Source of the DNA: Macrostomum lignano
Taxonomy: Eukaryota
NCBI GenBank assembly: GCA_002269645.1
Contig: NIVC01001534.1
Location: 44,135-75,035, forward strand
DNA length: 30,901 nucleotides
Reading direction: 5' to 3'
The notes under the pieces are model-generated. The model did no database searches, was not told the origin of the DNA, and worked only from the letters and a program-made list of their open reading frames with translations. A program made the translations under genes and the position numbers. Below, piece after piece: positions 171-28,500 of the stretch (the stretch's first letter is position 1; each line of letters opens with the position of its first letter).

Positions 171-189
171 CAGGCAGAAACGTGGCAGC

Positions 190-487
190 CGGCACTCAGT
201 CACGAGCCGGCAGAGCTGAGCAGAATCTTGCTGACGCTTGTTGCGAGCTGGCAGGCTGAGCAGAATCTCGCTGACGCTTGGTTGCGAGCTGGCAGGGCTG
301 AGCAGAAGTCTTGATGGCGCTTGCTTGTGTGCTGGCAGCGCTGAGCAAGAGTCTCGGTGGCACTGATTACGAGTTGGCAGCGCTGAGTAGACGTCTCGGT
401 GGTGCTTAGTTTCGAACGTGTTGATGTTGAGCAGAATCTCAGTGGCGCTTAGTTGCGAACCGGCAGTGCTGAGCTTGGTCTCGGTGG
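190..487. repeat. Degenerate tandem array A (~42 bp unit, 7 copies) ending in the PBS
   Basis: G(C/T)TGAG anchors at 215, 255, 297, 340, 382, 426 and 468 (periods 40-44). TCTC(G/A)GTGG occurs at 352, 394, 437 and 479. Confidence 0.85.
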
Positions 488-5147: not shown

Positions 5148-5498
5148 GTGATTGCCTTTGACGAGCTGCAAAATGATTACAAGAATCCCATTGACCAGTG
5201 TCGCAGCCTTAACTCCCTAGTGCTGCCAGAGTACATTGTGCACGCCCTAATGTCACTAATGTTCTTGTTCAGCGGCCAGTTGTTTTCATTCATACTGAAC
5301 CTGCCGCTAGCTGCCTACCATGTGAAACGGTACATAGACAGGCCTGTGCTGAGCTCGCCAGGCCTATACGACCCCACCAGCATCATGAATGCCGACAAGT
5401 TGCGAAGGGCAATGCGCGAAGGCTGGGTTAAATTGGCCATCTATCTGTGCTCATTTTTCTACTATCTCTACTGCATGATCTATGTGCTGGTGTCGTGA
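5148..5498 (+). CDS. CNIH: Cornichon homolog, coding exon 2 (ER cargo receptor; 143 aa in total)
   Basis: CAG acceptor at 5145-5147, then VIAFDELQNDYKNPIDQC...LVLPEY...GLYDPTSIMNAD...EGWVKLAIYLCSFFYYLYCMIYVLVS*. These are hallmark cornichon motifs. Confidence 0.96.
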   Translation: MIAFDELQNDYKNPIDQCRSLNSLVLPEYIVHALMSLMFLFSGQLFSFILNLPLAAYHVKRYIDRPVLSSPGLYDPTSIMNADKLRRAMREGWVKLAIYLCSFFYYLYCMIYVLVS

Positions 5499-10162: not shown

Positions 10163-10241
10163 ATGACAAACGGTCGAATTTCCAAGGTTACTACAGGATA
10201 CCTGCTCATGATCTGCGTTTGCTTGGTCGCAATGATGTTCG
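10163..10241 (+). CDS. Receptor exon 1: signal peptide MTNGRISKVTTGYLLMICVCLVAMMF
   Basis: Basic n-region plus hydrophobic h-region. GTAGGT donor at 10242 (phase 1) joins exon 2 in frame (G+TC = Val, then ANPEAA). Confidence 0.75.
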
Positions 10242-13200
10242 GTAGGTTTAGTGCAGCTGTTTGAGTGTTGTAGTTATAGTAATTAAGTGAAAGACTGGTG
10301 ATAACCAAGTCTGGCATCATCAGTCAGTTTCCAACTCAGTCACTCTCCCCGTCAGTCACTCTCCCCCTCAGTCACTCTCCCCGTCAGTCACTCTCCCCGT
10401 CAGTCACTCTCCCCGTCAGTCACTCTCCCCCGTCAGTCACTCTCCCCCTCAGTCACTCTCCCTCTCAGTCACTCTCCCCCTCAGCCACTCTCTCAGCTCA
10501 GTCACTCTCCCCCTCAGTCAGTCTCCCCCTCAGTCACTCTCCCCGTCAGTCACTCCCCCCTCAGTCACTCTCCCCGTCAGTCACTCTCCCTCTCAGTCAC
10601 TCTCCCCCTCAGTCACTCTCCCCGTCAGTCACTCTCCCCCTCAGTCAGTCTCCCCCTCAGTCACTCTCCCCGTCAGTCATTCTCCCCGTCAGTCACTCTC
10701 CCTCTCAGTCACTCTCCCCCTCAGCCACTCTCTCAGCTCAGTCACTCTCCCCCTCAGTCAGTCTCCCCCTCAGCCACTCTCTCAGCTCAGTCACTCCCCC
10801 CCTCAGTCACTCTCCCTCTCAGTCACTCTCCCCCTCAGTCACTCTCCCCGTCAGTCACTCTCCCCCTCAGTCAGTCTCCCCCGTCAGTCACTCTCCCTCT
10901 CAGTCACTCTCCCCCTCAGTCACTCTCCCCGTCAGTCACTCCCCCCCTCAGTCACTCTCCCCGTCAGTCACTCTCCCTCTCAGTCACTCTCCCCCTCAGT
11001 CACTCTCCCCGTCAGTCACTCTCCCCCTCAGTCAGTCTCCCCCTCAGTCACTCTCCCCGTCAATCACTCTCCCCGTCAGTCACTCTCCCCCTCAGTCAGT
11101 CTCCCCCTCAGTCACTCTCCCCGTCAGTCACTCTCCCCGTCAGTCACTCTCCCCCTCAGTCACTCTCCCCGTCAGTCACTCTCCCCGTCAGTCACTCTCC
11201 CCGTCAGTCACTCTCCCCCGTCAGTCACTCTCCCCCTCAGTCACTCTCCCTCTCAGTCACTCTCCCCCTCAGCCACTCTCTCAGCTCAGTCACTCTCCCC
11301 CTCAGTCAGTCTCCCCCTCAGCCACTCTCTCAGCTCAGTCACTCCCCCCCTCAGTCACTCTCCCTCTCAGTCACTCTCCCCCTCAGTCACTCTCCCCGTC
11401 AGTCACTCTCCCCCTCAGTCAGTCTCCCCCGTCAGTCACTCTCCCTCTCAGTCACTCTCCCCCTCAGTCACTCTCCCCGTCAGTCACTCTCCCCCGTCAG
11501 TCACTCTCCCCCTCAGTCACTCTCCCTCTCAGTCACTCTCCCCCTCAGCCACTCTCTCAGCTCAGTCACTCTCCCCCTCAGTCAGTCTCCCCCTCAGTCA
11601 CTCTCCCCGTCAGTCACTCTCCCCGTCAGTCACTCTCCCCCTCAGTCAGTCTCCCCCTCAGTCACTCTCCCCGTCAGTCACTCTCCCCGTCAGTCACTCT
11701 CCCCCTCAGTCACTCTCCCCGTCAGTCACTCTCCCCGTCAGTCACTCTCCCCGTCAGTCACTCTCCCCCGTCAGTCACTCTCCCCCTCAGTCACTCTCCC
11801 TCTCAGTCACTCTCCCCCTCAGCCACTCTCTCAGCTCAGTCACTCTCCCCCTCAGTCAGTCTCCCCCTCAGCCACTCTCTCAGCTCAGTCACTCCCCCCC
11901 TCAGTCACTCTCCCTCTCAGTCACTCTCCCCCTCAGTCACTCTCCCCGTCAGTCACTCTCCCCCTCAGTCAGTCTCCCCCGTCAGTCACTCTCCCCGTCA
12001 GTCACTCTCCCCCTCAGTCACTCTCCCCGTCAGTCATTCTCCCCGTCAGTCACTCTCCCCGTCAGTCACTCTCCCCCTCAGTCACTCTCCCCCTCAGTCA
12101 CTCCCCCTCAGTCACTCTTCCCGCTCAGTCACTCTTCCCGCTCAGTCAGTCTCCCCTCAGTCACTCTCCCCAACAGTCAGTCTCCCCTCAGTCACTCCCC
12201 CTCAGTCACTCTTCCCGCTCAGTCACTCTCCCCCCAGTCAGTCTCCCCGTCAGTCACTCTCCCCGTCAGTCAGTCTCCCCTCAGTCACTCCCCCTCAGTC
12301 ACTCTTCCCGCTCAGTCACTCTCCCCCCAGTCAGTCTCCCCCCCAGTCACTCTCCCCTGAGTCACTCACCATTCAGTCACTCTCACCCCAGTCACTCTCA
12401 CCCCAGTCACTCTCCCACTAATTTCCTGCATCGTTTCTCTCTCACAGTCGCCAACCCCGAAGCGGCCACGATCGTACCGTCCGACGCGAACGCGGTGCCC
12501 TCCGCGCTCCGCTGCCCAGACGGCCGCATTCCGCTGAACAGCCCGCAGGCGCGCTGCCGCTCGCAGCCGCAGCTGCAGTGGGCCGGCAGGCGCTGCGAAA
12601 ATGACAGCCTGGATTTCAGCTGCCCGCACGGATACGACTGTCTAGCGGAGGGCATCTGCTGCGAGCCGCCACAGCTCCCGGTGAGCCGCTGGTCCGTAAT
12701 ATTGTCTGAAACCTCTCAGTCTGACACCTCTCACTCTGACCTCAGTCTGACACCTCTCACTCTGACCTCAGTCTGACACCTCTCACTCTGACCTCAGTCT
12801 GACACCTCTCACTCTGACCTCAGTCTGACACCTATCCCTGTGGTCCTCAGCCTGACACCTCACTCTGGCCTCAGCCTGACACCTCTCCTTCTGGTTTTCA
12901 GTCTGACACCTCTCTGGCCTCAGCCTGACACCTCTCTGGTCCTCAGTCTGACACCTCTCTGGTCCTCAGTCTGACACCTCTCTGGTCCTCAGTCTGACAC
13001 CTCTCTGGTCCTCAGTCTGACATCTCTCTGCTCCTCAGTCTGACACCTCTCTGGTCTTCAGTCTGACACCTCTCACTCTGGCCTCAGTCTGACACCTCTC
13101 ACTCTGGCCTCAGCCTGACACCTCTCCTTCTGGTTTTCAGTCTGACACCTCTCTAGTCCTCAGTCTGACACCTCTCTGGTCCTCAGTCTGACACCTCTCT

Positions 13201-16200
13201 GGTCCTCAGTCTGACACCTCTCTGGTCCTCAGTCTGACACCTCTCTGGTCCTCAGTCTGACACCTCTCTGGTCCTCAGTCTGACACCTCTCTTGTCCTCA
13301 GTCTGACATCTCTCTGGTCCTCAGTCTGACACCTCTCTGGTCCTCAGTCTGACACCTCTCACTCTGGTCCTCAGTCTGACACCTCTCACTCTGCTCCTCA
13401 GTCTGACACCTCTCACTCTGGTCCTCAGTCTGACACCTCTCACTCTGGTCCTCAGTCTGACACCTCTCACTCTGCTCCTCAGTCTGACACCTGAACCTGA
13501 TTCCGCATTGCAGCAGCCGCAGGTGCACCTGTGCCGCATGAGCAGGTCTGGCAGCAAAGCGGTAGACATTGTCGGCAGCTGCTCAGCGAACTCGGACTGC
13601 AAGGGTTACGATAGTCTAGCCAGCAGGTGCTGCAGCGGCAGCTGCGTTCTGCTGAAGCAGCGTAGGTTTTGACAACCGACGGCCTTTTCTAGAAAGATTC
13701 GCTTACAACAATCAACTTTTCAACCAATCAAGAAACGAACCATTCATTTACAGGCTGCTTCAGGCAACGACGCCAATATCAGAGCATTTTGTCCACTGGA
13801 CAGGTGCCGAGAATCTACTTGCCCAAGTGAGTAGAAACTATCCGCTTGGTAACAATTTAGTTCAACTCAAGCAATGCGTGACGCCAATGCCATTGGCGAC
13901 TTAGTAACGCGCGAAGGAACCGCGCGAGCATCTTTCATAGGGTATGGATCGCTGTTTCATTTAGAGAGAGGGGCGCACAAGGGGCGCCAGCACCAGGGGC
14001 GCCAGCACCAGGGGCGCCAGCACCAGGGGCGCCAGCACCAGTAGGACCAGTGGGGGATGTGGCAGCTAAGCTACGAGAGATCCAATAAACGAAATAAAAA
14101 TGCTTCAATTTAGCGTTTTTCTACTAAAAGTAGCTTGCACACGAATGTGCTGAGAGGACAGTCCAGTTGTTTTATGCATCTGCAGGCTAGATAGACAGCC
14201 CTAAAACTAAAGATATTGTCTGCTAAAAACACGAGAGTAGTATCTTTAGCAAATTATCAATAAAATTTAGACTATTTTAATGAACCCAATCACCTTGCCA
14301 AGCTGCACCGACGACGGCGCCTTCGAATCGGTCCAGTGGGAGCCGCGCTTCAACCGGCGCTGGTGCGTCGACCAGCGGACCGGCCTGGCGCTTCGCTCCG
14401 GCTGCTGCCTGGCTGGCAACTCGCGACCTGCGTGCTCGAACCCGCGACCTTGCCCACCCGAGCTGTGCGCCCTGAGCGTCTGTCCGGCCAGACCGGACGC
14501 CGTCTGCAGGGTGAACGTCTGCGGCGACGGCGACTGCCGGGCGGAGTTCTTCGACCCAGCCAGCGGCCAGCCGGTCGACTGCGGCGCCGGGCTGGGCCGC
14601 TGCCGTGCCGGCCAGGCCGCCTACTTCGAGGGCCTGGCCTACCTGCGGGCTCGCGACCAGACCCAGTGGCTGCAGGTGCGAATAGGGGCATTAATTAGAT
14701 TAGATTATGTAGGGGTGTGGTGTGCAGTAGATTGTGTCTATGGTTTTGGAGGCAGACAATGGTAGATTGTGTCTATGGCTTTGCAGTCAGACAATGGTAG
14801 ATTGTGTCTATGGCTTTTCAGTCAGACAATGGTAGATTGTGTCTATGGTTTTGGAGGCAGACAATGGTAGATTGTGTCTATGGTTTAGGAGGCAGACAAT
14901 GGTAGATTGTGTCTATGGTTTTGGAGGCAGACAATGGTAGATTGTGTCTATGGCTTTGCAGTCAGACAATGGTAGATTGTGTCTATGGCTTTTCAGTCAG
15001 ACAATGGTAGATTGTGTCTATGGTTTTGGAGGCAGACAATGGTAGATTGTGTCTATGGTTTAGGAGGCAGACAATGGTAGATTGTGTCTATGGTTTTGGA
15101 GGCAGACAATGGTAGATTGTGTCTATGGTTTTGGAGTCAGACAATGGTAGATTGTGTCTATGGTTTTGGAGGCAGACAATGGTAGATTGTGTCTATGGTT
15201 TTGGAGTCAGACAATGGTAGATTGTGTCTATGGTTTTGGAGGCAGACAATGGTAGATTGTGTCTATGTTTTTAGAGGCAAATGAAAATTCCGCAAAACGG
15301 TTGGTCAAATCTCATTTTCAACAGACTGACGCCATCAACAAGCCGGCCACTTCGGACAGAAACCTGGCCGCCTACATGGACACCTGCGAGCAGGACGAGT
15401 GCAGGGCCTACAGCGCCAGTTTGCTTGAACCAGCTGCCTTCGGTTTCGGCAGCTTTAAAAAAGTATGTTTGCTATCGCACTAAGGTATACACAGGGCATC
15501 CCTATCCCCCAAATGCACGCTCCTGTCCCAGTGTAAGCTACAATCCGTCGTCTATCCAACTAAAACAATTTATGTTGTCAAAACAGGCACCTGCGCCTCC
15601 TGCACTGGTTGCTGGGCAGTTCGACTCCTTGCGGATGACTTAATCCTGCCAGTTCTTGCAAAACCCTTCAATGCTCTCGTCAACAGATTTGCCTCCCATT
15701 AAACAGTTCCAACTCATGCCCACCCGGTTTTTCAGGAAGACTGCCCGAAGCAGAACGACCTGAACTATCACTGCCGAAACAGGTGCAACGCCTTCAGCGG
15801 CTGTCCAACTGAAAGTCAGGTGTGCTGCAACAGCGGCTGTGGCCTCGAGTGCATGTCGCCGGCCGACATTAAGCCGGAGTCGCATTGCTCCATGAGCATT
15901 AGCTCCGGTCACTGTCCGGCGGTTGGCTGCTACCGGATGTGCCGACGCTGGGGCTACGACGTGGCGAAAAAAGTCTGCCGTCCGTTCTGGTACGCCGGCT
16001 CCGGCGGCAACAACAACCGGTACAACTCCTGGGCCGAGTGCGAGTGGATGGCGCAGAACTGCCACGGCCGGGTGCGCATCGCGCTGCCCGTCCGGCCGCT
16101 GTGCAAGCGCCGGACAGGCAATTTTGAAAATGTCCAGGTGTCGGACAATGGCATGTTCTGGTGCGTCGACCGGAACGGTGTGCCGACGCCTGGCACTCTG

Positions 16201-19200
16201 CACGCCGACCATATCGCGTGCACTCGAGACGGTCGGCTGATCATTAATAAGTAAATCCAGTGGGAGAGTTGGGGCATTCTGAAAGAAGTCAACCGTCAAA
16301 TCACAGGATTGATGCACAAGTGTGAGATCGTTCAAAATTTCTCAACTCGCTTACATCAACCTTGCACTCCCACTCCAACTCAGGTACTACCTGAAGGTGG
16401 CCCACCTGTACAAGGCCCGCTGTCCCAACGGAAAGCTGCCAGCCTGGTGTCACAATCGGACCATCGACCGAACATGCGGCAGTCCAGGAGTTGCCACCTT
16501 CGCCGACGCCTGCGACAATTGCAGGCTGGTGCACATCAACGCCAACGGCCAGGAGGTCAGCTGCCAGACCGACTCCGACGTCTGCGCCGCCTCCTCGATC
16601 TCCAGCTCCACCGCCGGCGGCCCGTCCCTGATCGCTTGCAAGTCGATGCCGACAACTCCAAACTTCCGCTACTCCCCCAGCACCGGCCGGTGCTCAGCCG
16701 GCTGCCCGGTCAGCGGAGCCAGTGGCTACTCAAGGGAGGCCGGCTGCCTTAGTGCCTGCGCCCGGGGCTGGTGCGGCAGAAACTCCACAGCCTTCTATCC
16801 GGATCTGTGCGTGAGCCCCGCCTGCCCCAGCTGGCCAGGGGCCCTCTGCGTCCCGGACGAGTGCACCGGCAGCGAGCGTTACTTCCTCCGCAACGGCACC
16901 GAGATTGCTGCCTGCGCCCGTCGGTTGGCCGCTCTGCACCCGAACGACAACTGCAGCAGCTCGGCGACTTCGACAACCACACCGTCTGGAAGAGCTGCGG
17001 ACGCGTCAACGACAAAAACATCAGGAAGAACTGAAGAAACAAAGACTACGCAGTCAGGAGCTGCCGCAGACACAAAGACCACCGCAGCGGAGGGAAGCGG
17101 CGGGGGTGCGCCTTCGACTGTGCCGACCTCGACTGCGCCACCCTCGACTGCGCCACCCTCAACTGCGCCACCCTCGACTGCGCCACCCTCGACTGCGCCA
17201 CCCTCGACTGCGCCACCCTCGACTGCGCCACCCTCGACCCCGATCGCGACTACAACTCCGACCAGCGTAGCGCCAACAACAACGACACCGCCGCCGCCAA
17301 AGAAGATTCTGCCTATCTGCTGGGTCCGGCTCCATCTGGGCGTAGAGAAGATGAAGTGCCGGGTCTCGGACGGCCTCTACGAAGCGAGGCAATGCAACCA
17401 GACTCACTGCTTCTGCGTGGTGTCCGACAACGGCGCCGTGCTCCCGGACCCGAGGCCGGTGCCGTTAGCGCAAGGATCTTCGCTTGCCTGTCGTAAGTTG
17501 AGCTTTCCAAATGGATGTCAACTTGAGCATCAGAATGGAACTCAGACCAAAAACCGACTGCATCGGTCCGACAAGTATTCTTTTGCGGTCGGAGTCTGCG
17601 GAATGAGCAGAAGATCAATTGCCTCACCGCTGGTCGTGAGACGACGCAGCCTTTCTGATAGATATGCATTTCTATTCTGGTGCTTATGTGGACATCCACT
17701 CTGTTAAAAAAGTTGATTTAGTAGCTAAAAACGCGTTATTCATGTCCAATTTCAGCGATTGTGGAGACCACTAACTTGTCAGTTACCATCACGTACGGCG
17801 CTGACTACATGTCTGTGCTGCCGACAATGGAGGACGAAGTGAAAATGCAGCGGTGAGAAAACGGCAACGTCAAACATTGTTTTTATTCTAAAAATAGCCA
17901 ATATCTGTTGTTAACAAAACAGCATGAACTCCAGTGTTTTGTGGTTTGACAGCGTTCAAATCAAGGACGACTTTGCTTCTTAGAAAACGTTTAATGGGCG
18001 GATCGTGAGAAAAAAAGCTACGCTCGTGGTGATAGCTTTTCCTTGGAATTTTCCCCGTATTTTTCTACTCAAATCATCCTTGGTTCAATGTGTGTCACGA
18101 AGGTTACAATGTGCAGTCTCATCCATGCCCATCCTCTAGACACAGAGTGTACATACCGGACGATTAGAAAGTCAGGAGGCCCGCTGTACACCCTGTGAGA
18201 GCGTGTGTATGAGTGCGGGCCTGCGTACAGTATTGGCGCGCTTGTGTGTTCAGGAGCCAGCAGAGTTGGCGTCAGCGCTGGTTGTGGGACGATTTTGCCG
18301 AAGGCGCCAGGGTGCCCGCAGCCCTCCTGCAGTTATTATTATTATTTTAACTGTCTTACTGCCTGCCTGCCCACAGTCACATACCGACCATAACTCCCGC
18401 AGAATCGTGGCCAAGCGATTCGCTTACGAAGGAAATCTTCAGGCGCACCACATCCGCCTCGTTGACCTGGAGCCCGGCAGCATTCTGGTGACCGTCGGTA
18501 TGCAGAAGTCGCCAGGCGATTCGACTGCCGACCTCCCTGCGTCCGCGTTCGAGCTCAAGACAATGGTTGGTTTTGAGGGCTTGGGGCTGTTCAAAAACGA
18601 AGTTAAGCAAAGTTGACCGCGGATAGTACGCGTAGGCTACCTGGGTCACCCTCCTCCGCAATAAACATACCTTTGACCGAGTGGCAAGTCAAACCTGGGC
18701 TTTCGTTCTGAGGTGAGGTAGAAATACAGGTGGGATTTGTGACCCCCCCCACAGTGCCAACGCTGTACAAGCACGAATTTAAGATACACAAATAGCTTGC
18801 ACACAGGAACTACTCAAGTATCGCTTTTGACGATCTAAAAAACGGGACGCCATAGACATTCAAGCCAGGCCACAGATCTCACCCTAGTCATGGACTTAAG
18901 CAGTTTAGCTGAGTCTACTGAGGCAGGCTTGGCCATAGACTATAACTTTGGGCATTCAATATGGGAAAAAGCCATTCAAAACGGGAATCGGACTGAGATT
19001 TTATAGCTCTCAGTCCCTCTCTCCCCTGTTTGCTCGTCGCGTCTTTGGCCTGAAAGCGAACGAATTCAATGGCGCCACCAATTCCTGACGCTCAAGGAGT
19101 TCCGAGTTACTTTTGTTTTGCTTCCGGTAACGGACACTTTGTTCACTTTTAAATATTCCAGTGGCCTTGACATATAAAAATACGTTAAATTGGGCGAATT

Positions 19201-21197
19201 CCCGTTTTGAACGGCTTTTTCCCATTTTTATTGTCAATTCCACATTCTAAGGTTGTGTATTCCCATCCAAGCAGCCCAAGTCTGTGGTCTGGCATGAATG
19301 TCAATGGCGTCCCGTTTTGATTGTCCAAATTCATTCCCGTTTAGATCGTCAAAAGCGATACAAGGACGCTACACTTGATTTTCTTAGAAATAAGCTTGAA
19401 TTGTATGCCGGTATGAGGAACGCATATTTGTGTTTGAAAACTTCGCCATCGACAAAGACGATTATTACTCATACTCGTACTCATACAGTGTACTACTGGC
19501 GATAGGTCGAAAAATACACGTTCCTTACCGGCCTACAGCTCATTTCTAAGAAAAAATCCAGTGTAGCTTAGCTTCCCTCTACTGCATTTTTCCATGTGTG
19601 CAAGCTGTACACTGCAATTGCATGTAATTTACCAATATCTAGGACCGGATATCTCACTTGAAATCTTAATCCAGGCCTTGAAGCAGACTCTGCTAATCGA
19701 CTTCAACGGTGTCACCCTGGCGCCGTCGGCTCGGCAGAGCTTCAACGAGAATTTCGACAGCTCAATTGTAGAGCCGCCGACCGCGGCGCCGCTATTCCGA
19801 GGCAACAGCGACAGCGGCGCCCCGCTGAACGTGGTCGGAATCGTTGTCGGAGTGCTCATCACGGTTGCCGTGGTAGCCGTGGCCGCAGTGCTCATCACGG
19901 TGAGTTGGCCAGTTAAGGCTATTGCTGCTTAGGGTGACCTACTACCTACCCTGCTGCAATTTTACGCTACTCAATACTTTTTGGAGATTGGGACTGGCGC
20001 AGACGCTTAAGGTCTGATGTGTTCAGAAATTCTCAATCAAAGAATGCGGGGTTAGATCGAGGGCCTCCCTCAAGCAAAGGATGCGGGGTTAGAGGCCGTC
20101 CTTCAATCAAAGGATGCGGGGTTAGATCGAGGGCCTCCCTCAAGCAAAGGATGCGGGGTTAGATCGAGGGCCTCCCTCAAGCAAAGGATGCGAGGTTAGA
20201 GGCCCTCCCTCAAGCAAAGGATGCGAGGTTAGAGGCCCTCCCTCAAGCAAAGGATGCGAGGTTAGAGGCCCTCCCTCAAGCAAAGGATGCGGGGTTAGAG
20301 GCCCTCCTTCAATCAAAGGATGCGAGGTTAGAGGCCCTCCCTCAAGCAAAGGATGCGGGGTTAGAGGCCCTCCTTCAATCAAAGGATGCGGGGTTAGAGG
20401 CCCTCCCTCAATCAAAGGATGCGGGGTTAGAGGCCCTCCCTCAATCAAAGAATGCGGGGTTAGAGGCCCTCCCTCAATCAAAGGATGCGGGGTTAGAGGC
20501 CCTCCCTCAATCAAAGGATGCGGGGTTAGAGGCCCTCCCTCAATCAAAGAATGCGGGGTTAGAGGCCCTCCCTCAATCAAAGAATGCGGGGTTAGAGGCC
20601 CTCCCTCAATCAAAGGATGCGGGGTTAGAGGCCCTCCCTCAATCAAAGAATGCGGGGTTAGAGGCCCTCCCTCAATCAAAGGATGCGGGGTTAGAGGCCC
20701 TCCCTCAATCAAAGGATGCGGGGTTAGAGGCCCTCCCTCAATCAAAGAATGCGGGGTTAGAGGCCCTCCCTCAATCAAAGAATGCGGGGTTAGAGGGCCA
20801 CAGAGCCTTTTGGTCGCTTTATTTTTACATCAGTCGCGTGGTTTGACTTCTCATACATTTGATGGCGGTATGATTGCGAGGGAGCCTTTGATTCAACAAT
20901 CGGTCTTGGTAATCGCTTGGATTTAATATCCAGCTGCACCACATATTTGAGAGTATATAGCTAACTATTTGATTTTATAACCGTACCCCCGTGCAACAGT
21001 TCGCTTTGCGCAGACGCGCCCAGTCCGGAAGCCCCGCTCTGCCACACGAGTCCGGCAACTACGAGACCATGTCGAATGCCAGCCATTCAACTGCTGGCGG
21101 CGGCGTAGCCTACGACAATTTCGCTAACAAGGTGTACGGCCCCATGGAGGACGATGTGTACGATAACATCGCCCAGCCAGCCATGTCCGATGCTTAA
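10163..21197 (+). CDS. 12-exon gene for a ~1116-aa type I membrane multidomain protein (SP, Lustrin-like, WAP, thyroglobulin-1 x3-4, Kunitz-like x2, mucin, SEA-like, TM, Tyr tail)
   Basis: Exons: 10163-10241, 12448-12680, 13514-13661, 13754-13826, 14303-14675, 15325-15462, 15736-16250, 16384-17492, 17756-17852, 18403-18565, 19675-19899, 21000-21197. All introns are GT-AG, phases 1,0,1,2,0,0,2,1,2,0,0 all match, and the total is 3351 nt = 1116 aa + stop. The exon 6/7 junction is the least secure. Confidence 0.8.
10321..12418. repeat. ~2.1 kb CT-rich minisatellite in intron 1 (unit TCAGTCACTCTCCCC(C/G), ~16-18 bp)
   Basis: Direct reading; roughly 125 copies (estimated from length). Confidence 0.97.
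12448..12680 (+). CDS. Receptor exon 2: Lustrin/WR1-like cysteine-rich repeat
   Basis: TCACAG acceptor; CPDGRIP...C...C...CPHGYDCLAEGICC; GTGAGC donor. Confidence 0.8.
12705..13491. repeat. Minisatellite in intron 2 (23/26 bp unit TCTGACACCTCTC(ACT)CTG(G/A)(T/C)CCTCAG-like)
   Basis: Direct reading; about 30 copies. Confidence 0.97.
13514..13661 (+). CDS. Receptor exon 3: truncated WAP-like module
   Basis: TTGCAG acceptor (NAGNAG, with a further in-frame AG at 13522); C...CSANSDCKG...RCCSGSC; GTAGGT donor. Confidence 0.75.
13754..13826 (+). CDS. Receptor exon 4: start of a thyroglobulin type-1 domain (CFRQRRQY...IYLP)
   Basis: TTTACAG acceptor and GTGAGT donor; phases 1 and 2 fit the neighbouring exons. 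Confidence 0.8.
13980..14039. repeat. (AGGGGCGCCAGCACC)4 in intron 4
   Basis: Four perfect 15-bp copies. Confidence 0.95.
14303..14675 (+). CDS. Receptor exon 5: Tg-1 core (CTDDGAF..Q..WCVD..G) plus unnamed Cys module
   Basis: AAG acceptor; NCTDDGAFESVQWEPRFNRRWCVDQRTG; GTGCGA donor. Confidence 0.85.
14727..15279. repeat. 35-bp minisatellite, 16 copies, in intron 5
   Basis: Unit GTAGATTGTGTCTATGGTTTTGGAGGCAGACAATG with five recurring variants. Confidence 0.97.
15325..15462 (+). CDS. Receptor exon 6: degenerate Tg-1-like segment (AAYMDTCEQDEC)
   Basis: TTTTCAACAG acceptor, GC3-rich frame, GTATGT donor. Confidence 0.7.
15736..16250 (+). CDS. Receptor exon 7: WAP domain, divergent Kunitz domain and Tg-1 domain
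   Basis: TTTTTCAG acceptor. WAP: CP..C..C..C..CC..GCG..C.SP (8 Cys). Kunitz: RWGYD....C..F.Y.GSGGN.NRY.S..EC. Tg-1: PLC...GNF...Q...WCVDRNG.P.PGT. GTAAAT donor. Confidence 0.88.
16384..17492 (+). CDS. Receptor exon 8: Cys modules, degenerate Kunitz, Ser/Thr/Pro mucin stalk and six-Cys Tg-1 domain
   Basis: CTCAG acceptor; FRYSPSTGRC..GC..SGYS..GCLSAC; (STAPP)7; C..KC...GLYEARQCNQTHCFCV...G...C; GTAAGT donor. Confidence 0.88.
17129..17233 (+). repeat. Coding VNTR (TCGACTGCGCCACCC)7 = (STAPP)7
   Basis: In frame within exon 8. Confidence 0.95.
17756..17852 (+). CDS. Receptor exon 9: N-terminal part of an SEA-like domain
   Basis: TTTCAG acceptor; PIVETTNLSVTITYGADYMSVLPTMEDEVKMQR; GTGAGA donor. 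Not shown in the ORF track. Confidence 0.75.
18403..18565 (+). CDS. Receptor exon 10: SEA-like domain with PGSILV motif
   Basis: CCGCAG acceptor; HIRLVDLEPGSILVTV; GTTGGT donor. Confidence 0.75.
18821..19358. mobile_element. 538-bp MITE in intron 10 with long TIRs and TA target duplication (Tc1/mariner-like)
   Basis: The left end TCGCTTTTGACGATCTAAA-AAACGGGACGCCATAGACATTCAAGCCAGGCCACAGA is the reverse complement of the right end, apart from a 22-bp insert and 3 mismatches. TA lies at 18819-20 and 19359-60. Confidence 0.85.
19675..19899 (+). CDS. Receptor exon 11: juxtamembrane region and transmembrane helix
   Basis: ATCCAG acceptor; VVGIVVGVLITVAVVAVAAVLIT; GTGAGT donor. Confidence 0.85.
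20032..20798. repeat. 33-bp minisatellite, ~23 copies, in intron 11
   Basis: Unit CTCAATCAAAGGATGCGGGGTTAGAGGCCCTCC with variants. Confidence 0.97.
21000..21197 (+). CDS. Receptor exon 12: stop-transfer signal and cytoplasmic tail with four Tyr motifs
   Basis: CAACAG acceptor; FALRRR...NYETM...AYDNF...VYGPM...VYDNI...*. Confidence 0.82.
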   Translation, partial: FALRRRAQSGSPALPHESGNYETMSNASHSTAGGGVAYDNFANKVYGPMEDDVYDNIAQPAMSDA

Positions 21198-22608
21198 TTT
21201 AAGCGAGAATTGAGATGTAAAATTGGACACTACTGAATCAAGCGTACACAAGAGACATTGTTACTAGCTCGTACTACTGCATGGATTGCAAAAGGATCTA
21301 TTTTTAATTCATTTCACTCGCTCTAGAAAAGGAAAAAGAAATTGTGGTGAATCTTGAGTGGAGCTGACACTATATATTAGAGTTTTGATGGCGCACCTGC
21401 CCATGGGTATCTTTGTATTGATGAGGTGGCACTGATTGGTCGATCTAACCTGCAGTGCAAAGTACGTGTCGCGTGCAACTAAAGTAGGACGCTAAACGCA
21501 ATCCGTGCGAATTTCCGTTTTCTAGCACAAATTTGTCAATACCGGAATTCCAAATTAAGCAAGCATGTGTTGTGTCCGAGGTGCGCTCACAAGTTTAGCA
21601 ACCTGTTTTTACCATGCAATAAAGCAAAAGTTCCGGCGGAACCTCAGCTACTCTTGTCTCTTTTGCTCGAACGAATGTGTCTATGGCAACACCTCATTTG
21701 CAGAAAAAGCAAATCCCTGCGAAATCCGTTTAGAACGCGCAACTGGGTTTTGAGTATTGCCGCTCTCCAACAATATTTTTTTCTATCTCTTGCTTCACAA
21801 GCTTGTGAGCTTGATTCGGAGATCGGTGAGGCATTGGGAATTTTACGATTTGCGATACATGCACTTTAGTTGGTCATGGTCTAGAGATTTAGAAGCTCCG
21901 TTCTTAATTCCCGTCTTTTTGGATCCTTTTATAATTAGCTTTCACCAGAATCAAAATTTTTTGTAATAATGGAAGTTTTTAACCAGTCGCCATTTATATT
22001 TGAAACCAAATCAATGCGTCATTCCATTTGCAATCTTCGAATATTTATTGGTGAAAATTACCAGTTACTCTTTTTTTATACAATGCCTTATCCAAGAAAA
22101 AGATGCGCTTTTTATTTAAAGCTAAGTTTTGTATATTTAGTTGGCAGTTGGCACCAAACAGGAAATAAGCTTGTTAGGCTTAAATTTTTTACGTTTGTTT
22201 TTTTATCACCGCTGCACAAAACAGTGTTATTATTTCCGGTGTGAACTAATTAAGTAGCTAAATATGGAACGAGCCTTGTTGTTTCTTATTTTTGAGATTG
22301 AGGTAAAATTAATGAATATAATAAATAGTCGACTACATTTTTGTTAAACTCCACTGACCCCAACTCACACCTTTAAATAAACTCTTATTGTTTAAAAATT
22401 CAAATCAATTTCAAAACAAGCAGTTTTGTTATAAACGCATTTAGAATAATAACCAGTGATATTTTCAAGCTACTATAGTATGACCGATCAATTGCATGAG
22501 TACAGAGTAATGTTTCACAACATGCACACACAGTTTAGTTTCAAATTTAAACCCCAATTGAGAGTCAAGCAAGGATTTAATCAAAGCCAAAAGTTCAGTC
22601 AACGCCAG

Positions 22609-22707
22609 CTACTGCTGCTTGAAGAAGGACGACTGCGATTGGCCGAAGAAGCCGGACTGCTTGCTGGCCGAGCGGGACGGCGCAAAGCCGAGAAGTTTTT
22701 GAACGTT
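22609..22707 (-). CDS. TMCO1: TMCO1, coding exon 2 (NVQKLLGFAPSRSASKQSGFFGQSQSSFFKQQ*); 186 aa in total
   Basis: TTTGCAG acceptor after a 112-nt intron. Matches the human C-terminus NIQKILGLAPSRAATKQ. Not shown in the ORF track. Confidence 0.93.
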   Translation of the reverse strand, partial: NVQKLLGFAPSRSASKQSGFFGQSQSSFFKQQ

Positions 22708-22819
22708 CTGCAAATTTTAAACGTTGATGCAGCATAATGGCTTTTTTTCAATGTCGCATGCAAATGATTCAATTTTGTTAACGTTTATAAGGTTGGATTT
22801 AGATCTAATTTGCACTCAC

Positions 22820-23281
22820 CTGTCGCACGGACATGGTGCAGATGACGTACAAGAAAGTGAAGGAGCAGTCGCTATAGTCCTCTCCTAGGAGGTTCCGATG
22901 CGAGATGCCCTGCAGAAGGGACACTGGCACAAATGGCAGCTTGGCAACCACTCGCCCGTCAAAAATAGAGTTAAACATGGAGAACAGCGCCGTGAACACT
23001 AAGAATATTGCCAGCATAGATTTCATGTTAACAAAAGACAAGTCGCGATTGAAGCTTTTCAATCTTTCCTCCTGTTTCTCCAGCTTGCGCTTGGCACTCT
23101 TGTCGCTAAGATCGGCGGCGCTGGTGTCTTTGCGCTTCTCCAGCCGGCGGCTCTGCTTATCAACTTCATCTCGGAGCTTTTTATACTTCTCGGTGCGATA
23201 GACCAGAAGCCAGGTGAGGCCTTCGCCTAAGAAAGCTGTGAACACGGCCACAAACAGAATTACTAGGGTGGACTCCAGCAT
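22820..23281 (-). CDS. TMCO1: TMCO1 (Oxa1-superfamily ER membrane protein), coding exon 1
   Basis: EGLTWLLVYRTEKYKKL...FNSIFDGRVVAKLPFVP...SHRNLLGED..DCSF.FLY..CTMS.RQ; GTGAGT donor at 22819. Confidence 0.96.
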
Positions 23282-25563: not shown

Positions 25564-28500
25564 TTAGCTATTCATGACTTCATATATTTTAGCTACACCA
25601 GTGAGCTCTTTTCTGACTCTTTTTTCATTTGTAGCATATCCTAACTTGTGTACTTGCTTGTCATTTAGGAGGTACTGACAGAAGTATTTTTTTCTGAACT
25701 TTTCGGTTTGTGGACATTCGGTCAAGTAGTGTAGGATATCGGAACCATTTCTCGCTCCACACAGTCTACATGGTTCATGAGAGAAAATGTTGGGTGTAAT
25801 TTCGCATTTCAGTTTTAGGAGGGTTGTTAGGAATTTTTTGTTTCTAAAAGTGCATGGAAAGTAATCTGAAAGGTCAGGCCTGCAGATTTTTTTGTAGAGA
25901 TAGGCGTTTTTATAGAGTTTAATATGTTGCTGATTCTCTAGCTTTTGGCTAAGTTCTCTTTCTCTGTGTATCTTGAGGTGCTTTTTCACTAGGTATTTCT
26001 CGTTATTAAAGCTTTGGGAAAGTTTATCTTCAGTTAGTGCTTTTAAGTCTATACTTTCCAGTTTCTTTAGTATATTTGTTTTCCATGGATTTTTTTGGCT
26101 GGTGTTTGAGTAGAAAATTTCTAGTGTCGTTTGGCAAAGTTTTTGATGTCTAATCTTCAGCCAGTAGGTAAGATAGGTTTTAGCAATTCGTTGGGAGATT
26201 GGAGTAAGCTCAAGTTCTGATGATATCACACTGTTGCTAGCAAATTTTGGTAGATTGAGGAGATATTTGTAGAATTTCAGCTGAATGTTATCAATAGCTT
26301 TTGTTTCAGAAATGGTAGCCAGAGGGCCCCAGAGCTCACAGCCGTACGTGATAACGGGGGTGACAAGCGCGTCGAATAGTCTGCGAATGAGTGTGATGTC
26401 CAGGGACGTATTTTTTACCTTGTGGAGTAGGGAAAACATAGCTGAATAACCCTGCTTAGTTTGATGTTCAATACATTTTTTAAAGCTGTTTTTTGGTTCA
26501 AAAATAATTCCCAGGTATTTAAATTCATTTACTTCCTCTATTTCTTGGTTGTCGTAGATTATTTTTGTAGCAAAACTTTCTGTGTCATTTTTTTGTCTGG
26601 TACTGCCCTGCATAAACTTTGTTTTGCTTGCATTAACTTTCAAGTAGTTTTGCTTGCAGTAATTTTCCATAGTTGTAAATGTGTCTTGAAGTTCATCTTT
26701 GTTTTTAGCTAGAATGGCTTGATCGTCCGCAAAGAGCAGGATGAGTGGGAAAGCAGATCTCGTAAGAGAGCGCCTAGCGCTAGAGAGTTCAAGATATTCA
26801 ACAATGTCGTCAATATATAGTTCAAAAAGGATGGTAGAGAGAGGGTTACCTTGAAGAACACCTTTAGATATTGGGATTGGCTGGGTTTCATCATCATCAT
26901 CATCTTTCTTTAGAATGAAACAGGCATTTTTATGCATGTTCTTGATAAGTTCTGTCATTTGACCTTTAATACCTTGGTTATCCGTTTTGTGCCAAAGGGT
27001 CGGTTGATTTAAGCTATCGAAGGCTTTTTCATAGTCAACAAAACCGATAAAGAGTTCATTTTTGTTGTAGATGGACTGGTTTATAATGTTGTAAAGATTA
27101 AAACATTGGTCGATTGTGCTGTGATTGGGCTTGAAACCGTATTGGTATTTTGATATAAGATTGTTAGCGTATGCTAGGTTTTCAAGTCTGGATTTAATAA
27201 TTTGGCAAAAGAGCTTGCCAAAAATTGGTTGAATGCAGATTCCTCTGTAATTGTTGGGGTCGGCACTGCTGCCTTTGTTTTTATAAATCGGATGAAGAGT
27301 ATTTGTAATCCAACTAGTTGGAAAGGTTCCTTGTTTGAGTGCTTCGTTGAAAAGTGAGCATAGGAGGTCAGTAAGTTCGTTTTCAAGGTATTTGAGTGTT
27401 TCTACATATACTTTATCATGCCCAGGTGCTTTGTCGGTTTTGAGCTTTTTAATATGTTTTATAACTTCTTCTTTGGTGAATGGGGCATTGAAATCCTCTA
27501 AATTAGTCAGAATAGGGTTGTCAAGGTGAAGATTGTATGCTAGTCTAATGCTGCTGTCTTGTTCAGTTACAAGATTTTGAAAGTGTATGACAAATTTTTC
27601 GTCAATTGCTGCATTGTTATTGGGGCGGTTATGTGGTTTCAGTAATTGCCAAAGCTGTCTTGTATCATTTTGAATATAAGCCTGGTTGATCATGTTTTCT
27701 GCACACAGTATTGATTCATGTTTCCAAGAAATCAAGCTTTTTTCATATGTTTTTTTAAGCTGTATTTTGGATGCGAGGTTGCTACTTGTGGGGAACATCT
27801 TATATCTTCTGCTGGCATGCCTGGTGGCATTTCTCAGGTCTTTAAGAAATTGTGGCAATGCTGAACAGAGAGGGTTTTTTGTTTCTACTGTGATTTTACT
27901 TTGGATTTGCTGAACTTTCTTGCTTAAATTATGGATGAAAGCTGGGTTTTGCATGTCGAGATTTGGGATTTTATTCTCCAGATCCTTTAGATCATCTGAG
28001 AAGCAATTGATATGTTTTTCTTGTTGTGGGGTGGGTTTATCTAGTTTTCTTAATATCCGGAATTTTGTTCTTTGGTTATTGGTTGCTTGTTTTGTTTCTG
28101 TAATCTCTGCTGTGAATTTACATGATAATGAGAGTATAATTTGATTGTGGTCACTAAGGTAAGTATGGTTTCTTACTTTAAAGTCTTCAAAGTGCTCAAG
28201 TAAGTTGCTAGAGACAAAACAGAGGTCAATTACAGATGAACCAGTTTTGGAGATAAAGGTAAGTGTTCCAGTTGCATCAGATAGGGATCTACCATTGATT
28301 ATATGCAAGTTATATGAGTTTGTGATTTGGTTTAATAATCTACCACTTTTACAGGTTTTTTTGTCTTGGCTTTGCCTATAGAGTGAGATATTTTTTGCCT
28401 TTAAAGTGCTTATTCTATGCAAATCTATATGATCAGTATTGTAAGTATGTGCATTAAAATCTCCCACCAGGATTATGTTTTCTTCAGAATGATGTGCATC

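What the first reader, a model, noticed from the sequence alone, without database searches (positions are those of the whole stretch)
17129..21197. MUC1-like C-terminal half: (STAPP)7 stalk, SEA-like G|SILV, TM and multi-Tyr tail
Seen: seven STAPP repeats (17129-17233); a ~110-aa juxtamembrane domain from exons 9-11 containing LEPGSILVTV (GSILV at 18476-18490); a TM helix; RRR; and NYETM, AYDNF, VYGPM, VYDNI. Established: vertebrate transmembrane mucins such as MUC1 have a Ser/Thr/Pro VNTR (MUC1 contains GSTAPP), an SEA domain that autocleaves at G|SVVV, and a Tyr-phosphorylated tail. YxxM fits PI3K-SH2 and YxN fits Grb2-SH2 preferences. A Tg-1 domain next to a juxtamembrane domain and TM also recalls EpCAM/Trop2. 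Inference: the inhibitor-bearing ectodomain is held non-covalently after autoproteolysis and can be shed as a mechanical or protease sensor, either convergently with or ancestrally related to membrane mucins.
Basis: partly seen in the sequence, partly recalled or inferred. Interest (0 to 1): 0.7.

Follow-up and report, generated by a model that had tools for sequence, protein, structure and literature searches.

The report
Flatworm membrane protease-inhibitor's mucin-like, possibly self-cleaving anchor
The region encodes the membrane-anchoring end of an uncharacterised, Macrostomum-only flatworm surface protein: a short sugar-bearing stalk, a thyroglobulin-type module, a probable SEA-type domain with a conserved self-cleavage motif, a membrane helix and a four-tyrosine tail. 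It resembles MUC1 and EpCAM in layout but shows no detectable relationship to either.

Summary
The five C-terminal exons splice with canonical GT-AG sites into one open frame.

The window is Macrostomum lignano DNA. The gene has 12 exons (10163-21197, + strand) and encodes 1116 aa. It is identical to a database protein except for three extra STAPP-type units.

From signal peptide to tail the protein reads:
- Cys-rich inhibitor modules (WAP, Kunitz, two Tg-1);
- a 115-aa Pro/Thr/Ser stalk;
- a third Tg-1 module;
- a 120-aa Cys-free juxtamembrane domain;
- a TM helix followed by RRR;
- a 62-aa tail.

GSILV and all four tyrosines are conserved in the only ortholog found (about 60% identity). The STAPP array is not: the ortholog has a non-repetitive stalk, and M. 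lignano database copies carry 4, 5 or 8 units.

The SEA assignment is plausible but unproven. No sequence method detects SEA. Both AlphaFold models are low-confidence. They give the β-α-β-β-α-β order with G|S at the β2/β3 turn. The best Foldseek hit is an SEA domain, but it is not significant (E=0.05).

No homology to MUC1 or EpCAM is detectable. In layout the Tg-1–SEA-like–TM arrangement is closest to EpCAM/Trop2, with a MUC1-type GSφφφ motif added. Self-cleavage, shedding and phosphotyrosine signalling remain inference.

The parts
10163..21197 (+). Whole gene: 12 exons encoding a 1116-aa type I membrane protein of Macrostomum lignano. Exons: 10163-10241, 12448-12680, 13514-13661, 13754-13826, 14303-14675, 15325-15462, 15736-16250, 16384-17492, 17756-17852, 18403-18565, 19675-19899, 21000-21197.
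   Evidence: tblastn of P0004 plus a splice-site search. All introns are GT-AG. The product equals P0004 except for a 15-aa insertion. Pfam finds Tg-1 x3, Kunitz and WAP.
16955..17299 (+). Pro/Thr/Ser-rich stalk, residues 711-825 (115 aa): 44% Ser+Thr, 21% Pro, 17% Ala. Presumed to be O-glycosylated.
   Evidence: Composition computed. The ortholog has a non-repetitive S/T/A/P stalk at the same position.
17129..17233 (+). Seven exact STAPP units, preceded by a degenerate STVPT unit. The 15-bp tandem array spans 17114-17238. Copy number varies between database copies.
   Evidence: Unit counts are 8 in the window, 5 in P0004 and 4 in P0008. The array is absent from the ortholog.
17300..17492 (+). 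Third thyroglobulin type-1 domain, residues 826-889 (six Cys; CFCV in place of CWCV). It is followed directly by the juxtamembrane domain.
   Evidence: Pfam PF00086, E=8.1e-5, 22.4 bits against a cutoff of 20.6. The best PDB sequence match is a thyropin, 8r6t, E=0.01.
17756..17852 (+). Exon 9: predicted strand β1 and the start of helix α1 of the Cys-free juxtamembrane domain (IVETTNLSVTITYGADYMSVLPTMEDEVKMQ).
   Evidence: Splicing. Secondary structure of the AlphaFold models.
18403..18565 (+). Exon 10: the rest of α1, β2, the LEPG turn, β3 (SILVTVGMQ) and the start of α2.
   Evidence: VDLEPGSI is invariant between the two species.
18476..18490 (+). GSILV (G947-S948-I-L-V), the candidate SEA-type autoproteolysis site G|S. 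It lies at the predicted β2/β3 turn.
   Evidence: Sequence. The GSφφφ motif is defined in PMC7349879. Conserved as GSIIV in the ortholog. Arises in 0.65% of shuffles.
19675..19773 (+). First part of exon 11: end of α2, β4 (LLIDFNG) and the C-terminal end of the domain (to residue 1009).
   Evidence: 63% identity to the ortholog across the 120-aa domain.
19774..19824 (+). Poorly conserved 17-aa linker between the domain and the membrane (PPTAAPLFRGNSDSGAP). A possible site for an external sheddase.
   Evidence: 24% identity to the ortholog, against 63% in the domain. pLDDT is below 50.
19825..19899 (+). Transmembrane helix, first 25 of 28 residues (LNVVGIVVGVLITVAVVAVAAVLIT). The last three residues, FAL, are at 21000-21008.
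   Evidence: A hydrophobic run followed by RRR. 68% identity to the ortholog.
21009..21197 (+). Cytoplasmic tail of 62 aa plus the stop codon: RRR stop-transfer, YETM (21060-21071), YDNF (21111-21122), YGPM (21135-21146), YDNI (21159-21170), TAA at 21195-21197.
   Evidence: All four Tyr are conserved in the ortholog as YEIM, YDNF, YAPI and YDNI.
20032..20796 (.). 33-bp minisatellite (x22.8) filling most of intron 11. Non-coding and not part of the protein.
   Evidence: It lies between the donor at 19899 and the acceptor at 21000.

Best explanation
The region encodes the membrane-proximal third of a Macrostomum-restricted type I surface glycoprotein. Its N-terminal ~680 residues display an array of protease-inhibitor-type modules (WAP, Kunitz, Tg-1 and other Cys-rich units).

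Proposed mechanism, all of it inferred:
1. A 115-aa Pro/Thr/Ser stalk, probably O-glycosylated, holds the inhibitor array away from the membrane. Its short (STAPP)n array changes length by replication slippage.
2. A third Tg-1 module packs next to a 120-aa Cys-free α/β domain of SEA type, with β-α-β-β-α-β order.
3. On folding, strain at the conserved G947|S948 turn drives an N-to-O acyl shift. This cuts the chain into a large inhibitor-bearing subunit and a small subunit of 79 extracellular, 28 TM and 62 cytoplasmic residues. MUC1-C measures 58/28/72.
4. The two subunits stay joined through the shared β-sheet until force or unfolding releases the ectodomain.
5. The tail's four conserved YxxΦ motifs (two YxN, two YxxM) direct endocytic sorting, dock SH2 proteins after phosphorylation, or do both.

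Shown here: the gene structure, the domain order, the motifs, their conservation and the repeat-length variation. Inferred: the SEA fold, the cleavage, shedding, glycosylation, inhibitor activity and the function of the tail.
For: - **Gene model.** Identical to M. lignano P0004 apart from the repeat.
- **Domains.** Pfam finds Tg-1, Kunitz and WAP.
- **Juxtamembrane domain.** It has no Cys, while the N-terminal half is Cys-rich.
- **Fold.** Two independent AlphaFold runs give the same β-α-β-β-α-β order, with β3 starting at S948 or I949.
- **Foldseek, model 1.** The top hit is an SEA domain (2e7v, E=0.052) and rank 3 is a MUC16 chain (8vm1_A). Most of the remaining hits look, by my reading, like other α/β-sandwich domains.
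- **Foldseek, model 2.** 2e7v aligns at TM 0.46 and rmsd 4.7 Å over 99 columns.
- **hhalign.** Against the MUC1 SEA domain it places PGS on PGS and α1 on α1, though weakly (P=0.043).
- **Conservation.** The GSφφφ motif (PMC7349879) is invariant in an ortholog with 63% domain identity. VDLEPGSI is one of the longest invariant runs.
- **Chance.** Shuffle frequencies are 0.65% for GS[ILV]3 and 0.02% for four of four YxxΦ.
- **Tail.** All four tyrosines are conserved.
- **Literature.** SEA and SEA-like domains next to a structured neighbour such as Tg-1 can behave as proteolytic switches (PMC6586460). SEA cleavage products stay associated until mechanical force separates them (PMC10556640).
Against: - No SEA match in Pfam, even at E<=10.
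- No PDB sequence or profile hit for the domain.
- A profile search of 1.84 billion representative proteins found only Macrostomum sequences plus three matches to short stretches of repeat proteins, which I judge spurious.
- Both structure models are low-confidence (pLDDT 54 and 42). No Foldseek hit reaches E<=0.001, and all TM-scores are below 0.5.
- The two-domain model matched MscS best and did not match EpCAM or Trop2.
- The multiple alignment holds only two sequences, so conservation is measured over a single species pair.
- A GS motif in an SEA fold does not guarantee cleavage.
- Nothing here shows glycosylation, phosphorylation or inhibitor activity.
Confidence: 0.5

Rival explanations
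1. The domain is a non-cleaving SEA-like spacer of the EpCAM or Notch type. It folds as an α/β sandwich next to Tg-1 but does not cut itself. Any release of the ectodomain is carried out by external proteases. These would cut within the domain or within the poorly conserved 17-aa linker, possibly followed by intramembrane proteolysis.
For: The Tg-1 / Cys-free domain / TM order is the EpCAM/Trop2 order. The EpCAM C-domain is an SEA-type domain without the GSφφφ motif and is cut by other proteases (PMC7349879). Several SEA-like domains with a structured neighbour behave as regulated switches (PMC6586460). The linker is only 24% conserved and is predicted to be disordered.
Against: GSφφφ is present, sits at the predicted β2/β3 turn and is invariant in the ortholog. 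There is no sequence or fold match to EpCAM or Trop2.
Confidence: 0.27
2. The juxtamembrane domain is a lineage-specific fold unrelated to SEA, and GSILV is a coincidence. The domain would act as a spacer or a ligand-binding unit.
For: Every sequence-based test for SEA failed. The models are low-confidence and no Foldseek hit is significant. The domain is found only in Macrostomum.
Against: The predicted secondary-structure order, the length, the lack of Cys, the position next to the membrane after an O-glycan stalk, and the location of the motif all match SEA. SEA entries rank first and third among 350,542 PDB chains for model 1. Known SEA domains are notoriously divergent in sequence (PMC6586460, PMC7349879).
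Confidence: 0.18
3. The tail tyrosines act mainly as YxxΦ sorting signals that bind adaptor-complex μ subunits. They would drive endocytosis and recycling or polarised delivery of the inhibitor, and would not be phosphotyrosine docking sites for PI3K- or Grb2-type SH2 domains. This rival concerns the tail only and is compatible with any reading of the ectodomain.
For: All four tyrosines are followed at +3 by M, F, M and I in the window and by M, F, I and I in the ortholog, so YxxΦ is conserved four times out of four. The YxxM reading of the third site is lost in the ortholog, which has YAPI. The YxxΦ/AP-2 rule is established knowledge and was not tested here.
Against: Two YDN[FI] sites are strictly conserved, including the +2 Asn that YxxΦ does not require. 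Acidic residues precede Y1105 (EDDVY), as is common at tyrosine-kinase sites (inference).
Confidence: 0.45
4. The C-terminal half is a true homolog (ancestral relative) of vertebrate MUC1-type membrane mucins.
For: Only resemblance: the STAPP pentapeptide also occurs in the MUC1 repeat (my own knowledge), both have PGS followed by hydrophobic residues, and the subunit sizes are similar (PMC9488590).
Against: There is no significant similarity (hhalign P=0.043 and probability 1.2%). The gene is detectable only in Macrostomum. The STAPP array is absent even from the closest ortholog. A review argues that MUC1 emerged in mammals (PMC9564314, title and abstract only).
Confidence: 0.03

Closest known systems
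MUC1 and other SEA-bearing transmembrane mucins
   Same: Type I topology. A Pro/Thr/Ser region with a length-variable tandem repeat. A Cys-free juxtamembrane domain of about 120 aa with PGS followed by three hydrophobic residues at the predicted β2/β3 turn. After a putative cut, the small subunit would have 79 extracellular, 28 TM and 62 cytoplasmic residues, against 58/28/72 in MUC1-C (PMC9488590). The tail carries several tyrosines, including YxxM and YxN contexts.
   Different: No detectable homology. The repeat is 7-8 units of 5 aa (35-40 aa), against 25-125 units of 20 aa, and it is missing from the ortholog. Most of the ectodomain is Cys-rich inhibitor modules, not mucin. A Tg-1 module lies between the stalk and the juxtamembrane domain. 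The SEA fold is unproven.
EpCAM / Trop2 (GA733 family)
   Same: A Tg-1 domain is followed directly by a Cys-free α/β juxtamembrane domain and then a single TM helix. The EpCAM C-domain is classed as an SEA-type domain with no sequence similarity outside its own family (PMC7349879). Tg-1 is the structured neighbour thought to gate proteolysis (PMC6586460).
   Different: EpCAM lacks GSφφφ and is cut by other proteases, whereas this protein has a conserved GSILV. Only the Tg-1 signature aligns. No Foldseek hit to EpCAM or Trop2 was found. The N-terminal part is far larger, and the tail is 62 aa with four tyrosines, against about 26 aa in EpCAM (my own knowledge).
Membrane-anchored Kunitz inhibitors HAI-1/HAI-2 (SPINT1/2)
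   Same: A type I membrane protein that displays Kunitz-type inhibitor modules at the cell surface. This is a likely functional analogue for the whole protein (inference from Pfam Kunitz).
   Different: Pfam reported only Tg-1, Kunitz and WAP, so none of the other HAI modules was found. This protein also has a PTS stalk and an SEA-like module. No orthology is detectable.
Thyropins (Tg-1-type cysteine-protease inhibitors such as equistatin, the p41 fragment and testican)
   Same: Three Tg-1 domains pass Pfam's threshold. The best PDB sequence match of the third Tg-1 is a thyropin, 8r6t.
   Different: Thyropins are secreted or form part of other scaffolds. Inhibitory activity of these domains is untested, and the third domain has CFCV in place of the usual CWCV.

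Membership tests
SEA domain (Pfam PF01390 / SEA fold) | Significant match to an SEA sequence profile | tested here: not met
   No SEA hit at E<=1 or E<=10 for the window or the ortholog domain. No PDB hit with the two-sequence profile at E<=10. hhalign against the MUC1 SEA domain gives P=0.043 and probability 1.2%.
SEA domain (Pfam PF01390 / SEA fold) | An α/β sandwich of about 110-120 aa with β-α-β-β-α-β order | tested here: inconclusive
   Both AlphaFold models show this order, but at pLDDT 54 and 42. The top Foldseek hit is SEA 2e7v at E=0.052 and rank 3 is MUC16. No hit reaches E<=0.001 and all TM-scores are below 0.5.
SEA domain (Pfam PF01390 / SEA fold) | GSφφφ autoproteolysis motif at the β2/β3 turn | tested here: met
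   GSILV is at 18476-18490. β3 is predicted to begin at S948 or I949. The ortholog has GSIIV. The motif definition comes from PMC7349879.
SEA domain (Pfam PF01390 / SEA fold) | Extracellular position next to the membrane, close to O-glycosylated sequence | tested here: met
   The domain is at residues 890-1009, 17 residues before the TM helix and 64 residues after a 115-aa PTS stalk.
SEA domain (Pfam PF01390 / SEA fold) | Actual self-cleavage, with the fragments remaining non-covalently associated | not testable with these tools
   This needs expression of wild type against S948A, followed by fragment analysis.
Transmembrane mucins (MUC1 type) | A long, heavily O-glycosylated PTS tandem-repeat domain (MUC1: 25-125 repeats of 20 aa) | tested here: not met
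   The array is 7-8 units of 5 aa inside a 115-aa stalk. The ortholog has no repeat. The MUC1 figures come from PMC9488590.
Transmembrane mucins (MUC1 type) | Sequence homology to a mucin SEA/TM/tail module | tested here: not met
   The only homologs are Macrostomum proteins.
Transmembrane mucins (MUC1 type) | A cytoplasmic tail with phosphorylatable tyrosines used in signalling | tested here: inconclusive
   Four conserved tyrosines lie in YxN or YxxM contexts. Phosphorylation cannot be tested here, and the same sites fit YxxΦ sorting motifs.
EpCAM/Trop2 (GA733) | Tg-1 followed directly by a Cys-free juxtamembrane α/β domain and one TM helix | tested here: met
   Tg-1 spans 826-889, the domain 890-1009 and the TM helix 1027-1054.
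EpCAM/Trop2 (GA733) | Sequence or structural similarity of the C-domain to the GA733 family | tested here: not met
   hhalign aligns only the Tg-1 signature, or a 23-residue hairpin out of register. No EpCAM or Trop2 entry appears among the 50 Foldseek matches listed for either model, although both models are of low quality.
EpCAM/Trop2 (GA733) | A small N-terminal Cys-rich domain as the only other ectodomain module, and a short tail | tested here: not met
   About 680 aa of WAP, Kunitz, Tg-1 and other Cys-rich modules plus a PTS stalk lie upstream, and the tail is 62 aa.
Thyroglobulin type-1 domain (PF00086) | Passes the Pfam gathering threshold | tested here: met
   The third Tg-1 alone scores 22.4 bits against a cutoff of 20.6. 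The whole protein has 3 matched stretches at 74.4 bits.

The most novel reading that the evidence does not exclude
The Tg-1–SEA-like–TM module is an invertebrate relative of the EpCAM/Trop2 module that still carries the self-cleaving GSφφφ site. Here it is fused in one chain to a HAI-like Kunitz/WAP/Tg-1 inhibitor array. If so, the EpCAM C-domain would descend from an autoproteolytic SEA domain. A flatworm would also carry, in a single shed-on-force molecule, two components that vertebrates encode as separate proteins: a surface protease inhibitor and an EpCAM-type module.
Probability: 0.08. Interest if true: 0.7.

Novelty: new variant of a known kind. Interest (0 to 1): 0.35.

Why it matters
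If the domain is a self-cleaving SEA module, this protein would be a membrane-tethered multi-class protease inhibitor whose whole inhibitor array is held on by a non-covalent joint that force can break. I know of no characterised protein with this combination. Macrostomum lignano is a laboratory flatworm in which RNAi has been used, so the idea can be tested directly.

It would also extend the Tg-1 plus SEA-like arrangement, known from EpCAM and Trop2, to a flatworm, here together with the cleavage motif that EpCAM lacks.

The finding is limited in three ways. The gene is lineage-restricted, the evidence is entirely computational, and the resemblance to MUC1 is best read as convergence on a common cell-surface design.

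Tried and rejected
- **Pfam.** Scans of the domain, the ortholog domain and the full protein at E up to 10 gave no SEA match. The only C-terminal hit was a sub-threshold ECSCR match over the TM helix and tail, at 13.7-15 bits against a cutoff of 27.
- **PDB sequence searches.** The domain profile and the Tg-1+domain sequence gave only a thyropin match for Tg-1.
- **Profile search of 1.84 billion representatives.** It returned only Macrostomum proteins, plus P0005-P0007. Those three are repeat proteins that match stretches of 28-79 residues several times over, and I judged them spurious.
- **Two word-index searches of 5.8 billion proteins** (the C-terminal part and the N-terminal 681 aa). Only M. 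lignano entries and one ortholog were found.
- **AlphaFold, two constructs.** Both were low-confidence. Adding Tg-1 made the model worse (pLDDT 42), and its Foldseek list was led by MscS channels, which I do not take as meaningful.
- **hhalign.** Against the MUC1 SEA domain the alignment is in register but not significant. Against EpCAM it matched only a 23-residue stretch (LDLDPGQTLIYY against VDLEPGSILVTV) in the wrong topological position, or the Tg-1 signature.
- The Pei & Grishin 2017 paper is not held, so I cite it only through PMC7349879 and PMC6586460.
- **Not attempted.** I did not build a custom SEA profile. One remaining word-index search seeded with MUC1 would return mostly MUC1 orthologs. 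I also did not put SEA sequences into the AlphaFold alignment, because that would be circular.
- **Other negatives.** Rfam found nothing in the window. No paper mentions the gene identifiers.
- **ITAM reading of the tail, rejected.** The YxxΦ motifs are 3-4 residues apart, not the 6-8 an ITAM needs (my own knowledge).
Full report
**1.

Reading 16800-21500 and translating all three frames shows seven exact STAPP units at 17129-17233. A degenerate STVPT unit precedes them. Tandem Repeats Finder reports a 15-bp unit x8.3 with 95% matches at 17114-17238.

The downstream coding pieces have canonical AG/GT borders and join in frame:
- 16384-17492
- 17756-17852
- 18403-18565
- 19675-19899
- 21000-21197 (TAA at 21195-21197)

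The product contains LEPGSILVTV (GSILV at 18476-18490). It also has a 28-residue hydrophobic helix followed by RRR, and NYETM, AYDNF, VYGPM and VYDNI.

**2. Source and gene**

A search of 5.8 billion proteins with the C-terminal 291 aa returned only three hits. Two are Macrostomum lignano entries at 100% identity. The third, P0002, is 57% identical and comes from an RNA-seq assembly.

The window is therefore M. lignano (free-living flatworm) genomic DNA.

A profile search of 1.84 billion representative proteins added the full-length M. lignano protein P0004, 1101 aa. Mapping P0004 onto the window gives a 12-exon gene at 10163-21197 with all introns GT-AG. It encodes 1116 aa. This product is identical to P0004 except for 15 extra residues, which are three repeat units.

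| Feature | Residues | Evidence |
|---|---|---|
| Signal peptide (assigned by eye) | N-terminus | |
| Cys-rich modules: WAP (PF00095), Kunitz (PF00014), two Tg-1 (PF00086) | up to about 710 | |
| Pro/Thr/Ser stalk (44% S+T, 21% P) | 711-825 | |
| Third Tg-1 | 826-889 | |
| Cys-free juxtamembrane domain | 890-1009 | |
| Linker | 1010-1026 | |
| TM helix | 1027-1054 | |
| Cytoplasmic tail | 1055-1116 | |

A second search with the N-terminal 681 aa again found only M. lignano entries. At this sensitivity the whole gene is detectable only in Macrostomum. No paper mentions its identifiers.

**3. The stalk and the 'VNTR'**

The ortholog transcript (L001, run SRR30276804) has an S/T/A/P-rich stalk at the same place, but with no STAPP repeat.

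Among M. lignano database copies the number of 15-bp units differs. The window has 8, P0004 has 5, and P0008 has 4, read in a shifted frame. The rest of P0004 is identical to the window.

The array is therefore a young, length-variable slippage product inside a conserved mucin-like spacer. Whether the variants are alleles, duplicated copies (database names g2 and g4) or assembly collapse cannot be told here.

At 35-40 aa the array is far below a mucin domain. MUC1 has 25-125 repeats of 20 aa (PMC9488590).

**4. Is the juxtamembrane domain an SEA domain?**

*Sequence tests are all negative.*
- No Pfam SEA hit for the window or the ortholog domain, even at E<=10.
- No PDB hit with the two-sequence profile.
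- No relatives outside Macrostomum among 1.84 billion representatives. The exceptions are three repeat proteins matched on short stretches, which I judge spurious.
- hhalign against the MUC1 SEA domain gives P=0.043 and probability 1.2%. My recalled MUC1 sequence matched PDB 2ACM chains A and B exactly, which are deposited as two chains ending in G and starting with S. The weak alignment is in register, with PGS on PGS and helix on helix.

*Structure tests are inconclusive.*
- AlphaFold on the domain, with a two-row alignment, gave pLDDT 54. The predicted order is β1 (8-18), α1 (30-48), β2, β3 (64-72, starting at the Ser of GS), α2 (84-97), β4.
- The Tg-1+domain construct gave pLDDT 42, with the same order for the domain.
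- Foldseek against the PDB with model 1 ranks an SEA domain first (2e7v, E=0.052). A MUC16 chain, 8vm1_A, is third. Most other hits look, by my reading, like assorted α/β-sandwich domains. No hit reaches E<=0.001.
- With model 2 the list is led by MscS. SEA 2e7v appears at rank 35 (TM 0.46, rmsd 4.7 Å over 99 columns) and 1ivz at rank 50. Neither EpCAM nor Trop2 appears.

*Supporting features.*
- The length is about 120 aa and the domain has no cysteine, while the rest of the ectodomain is Cys-rich.
- It lies next to the membrane, downstream of a presumed O-glycosylated stalk.
- The GSφφφ motif (definition in PMC7349879) sits exactly at the predicted β2/β3 turn. It lies within VDLEPGSI, one of the longest runs invariant between the two species.
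- GS[ILV]3 arises in 0.65% of shuffles of the domain.

I estimate roughly 60-65% that the fold is SEA-type. I estimate roughly 35-45% that it actually cleaves itself.

**5. Comparison with EpCAM/Trop2**

The EpCAM C-domain has no sequence similarity outside its own family. By structure it belongs to the SEA group. It lacks GSφφφ and is cut by other proteases (PMC7349879).

Its neighbour is a Tg-1 domain. SEA and SEA-like domains with a structured neighbour behaved as contact-dependent proteolytic switches in a Notch-chimera assay. In the same assay MUC1 and IA-2, which lack such a neighbour, were cut constitutively (PMC6586460).

The flatworm protein has the same order, Tg-1 then a Cys-free domain then TM, and in addition carries the MUC1-type motif.

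Membership in the EpCAM family is not supported. Only the Tg-1 signature aligns. A 23-residue similarity to the EpCAM hairpin LDLDPGQTLIYY lies at a different position in the domain. There is no Foldseek hit to EpCAM or Trop2.

**6. The tail**

All four tyrosines are conserved in the ortholog: YETM/YEIM, YDNF/YDNF, YGPM/YAPI and YDNI/YDNI.

Two readings fit:
- **Phosphotyrosine docking.** YxN would suit Grb2-type SH2 domains and YxxM would suit p85-type SH2 domains. This is established knowledge and was not tested here.
- **YxxΦ adaptor-binding sorting signals.** This reading fits all eight sites in the two species. The YxxM reading of the third site fails in the ortholog.

Four of four tyrosines in a YxxΦ context occurs in 0.02% of shuffled tails. 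The strictly conserved Asn at +2 of the two YDN sites argues for a requirement beyond YxxΦ. I treat the two functions as about equally likely, and they are not exclusive. The spacing rules out an ITAM.

**7. Most likely mechanism**

The protein is a surface-tethered multi-class protease-inhibitor array, raised on a glycosylated stalk.

It is joined to its membrane anchor through a Tg-1/SEA-type module. That module probably cuts itself at G947|S948 during folding and holds the two subunits together non-covalently. The small subunit would have 79 extracellular, 28 TM and 62 cytoplasmic residues. MUC1-C has 58/28/72 (PMC9488590).

Force or unfolding would release the inhibitor array. This general behaviour of SEA domains is described in PMC10556640.

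Only the anatomy and its conservation are shown here. Every functional step is inferred.

The main rival is a non-cleaving SEA-like spacer of the EpCAM or Notch type, shed by external proteases. Next is an unrelated lineage-specific fold. True homology to MUC1 is very unlikely.

**8. Novelty and verdict**

The protein is not a member of the MUC1 or EpCAM families. It is a lineage-restricted, uncharacterised protein that combines known kinds of modules in a new arrangement, so I class it as a new variant of a known kind. Interest is moderate to low (0.35). The arrangement can be tested in a laboratory flatworm, but the case rests on motifs, a single ortholog and low-confidence models.

Noticed in passing
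window 10320-12416: A 2.1-kb satellite of a 16-bp unit (TCAGTCACTCTCCCCC, about 131 copies) fills most of intron 1 of the gene. It produces a spurious 707-aa open reading frame.
   Followed up: partly
window 12715-13492, 13975-14041, 14727-15279, 20032-20796: Four more introns of the same gene carry minisatellites: 23 bp x32, 15 bp x4.5, 35 bp x16 and 33 bp x23. That is unusually dense for a single gene.
   Followed up: no
window 18818-19361 (intron 10): Nested inverted repeats: arms of 22, 38 and 36 nt that are 89-100% complementary. They form a foldback of about 540 bp that looks like a MITE or foldback element insertion.
   Followed up: partly
window 5148-5498 (+): An exon of an upstream neighbouring gene encodes a Cornichon-family protein (Pfam PF03311, E=4e-37).
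   Followed up: partly
window 22805-23281 (-): A 158-aa ORF downstream matches the EMC3/TMCO1-like family (PF01956, E=1.7e-38).
   Followed up: partly
window 25564-29148 (-): An intact 1194-aa ORF carries an endonuclease domain and a reverse-transcriptase domain (PF03372, PF14529, PF00078). It looks like a non-LTR (LINE-type) retrotransposon in AT-rich DNA.
   Followed up: partly
window 22456-22737 (+) and proteins P0001/P0008: Two UniRef gene models replace the last residues (MSDA, then stop) with an extension of about 90 aa that maps about 1.3 kb downstream of the stop codon. The ortholog transcript ends like the window, so the extension is probably an annotation artefact. Several database models of this gene are also frame-shifted through the repeat.
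   Followed up: partly
window 14-474: Tandem repeats of 42-43 bp (and 83-85 bp) lie at the left edge of the window. The DNA is GC-rich and their significance is unknown.
   Followed up: no
window 14500-14640 and 16780-16910 (exons 5 and 8): A Cys pattern recurs twice in the N-terminal half and has no Pfam match: CPPELCALSVCPARPDAVCRVNVCGDGDCRAEFFDPASGQPVDC and CGRNSTAFYPDLCVSPACPSWPGALCVPDECTGSERYFLRNGTEIAAC. It may be an undescribed small disulfide-rich module.
   Followed up: no
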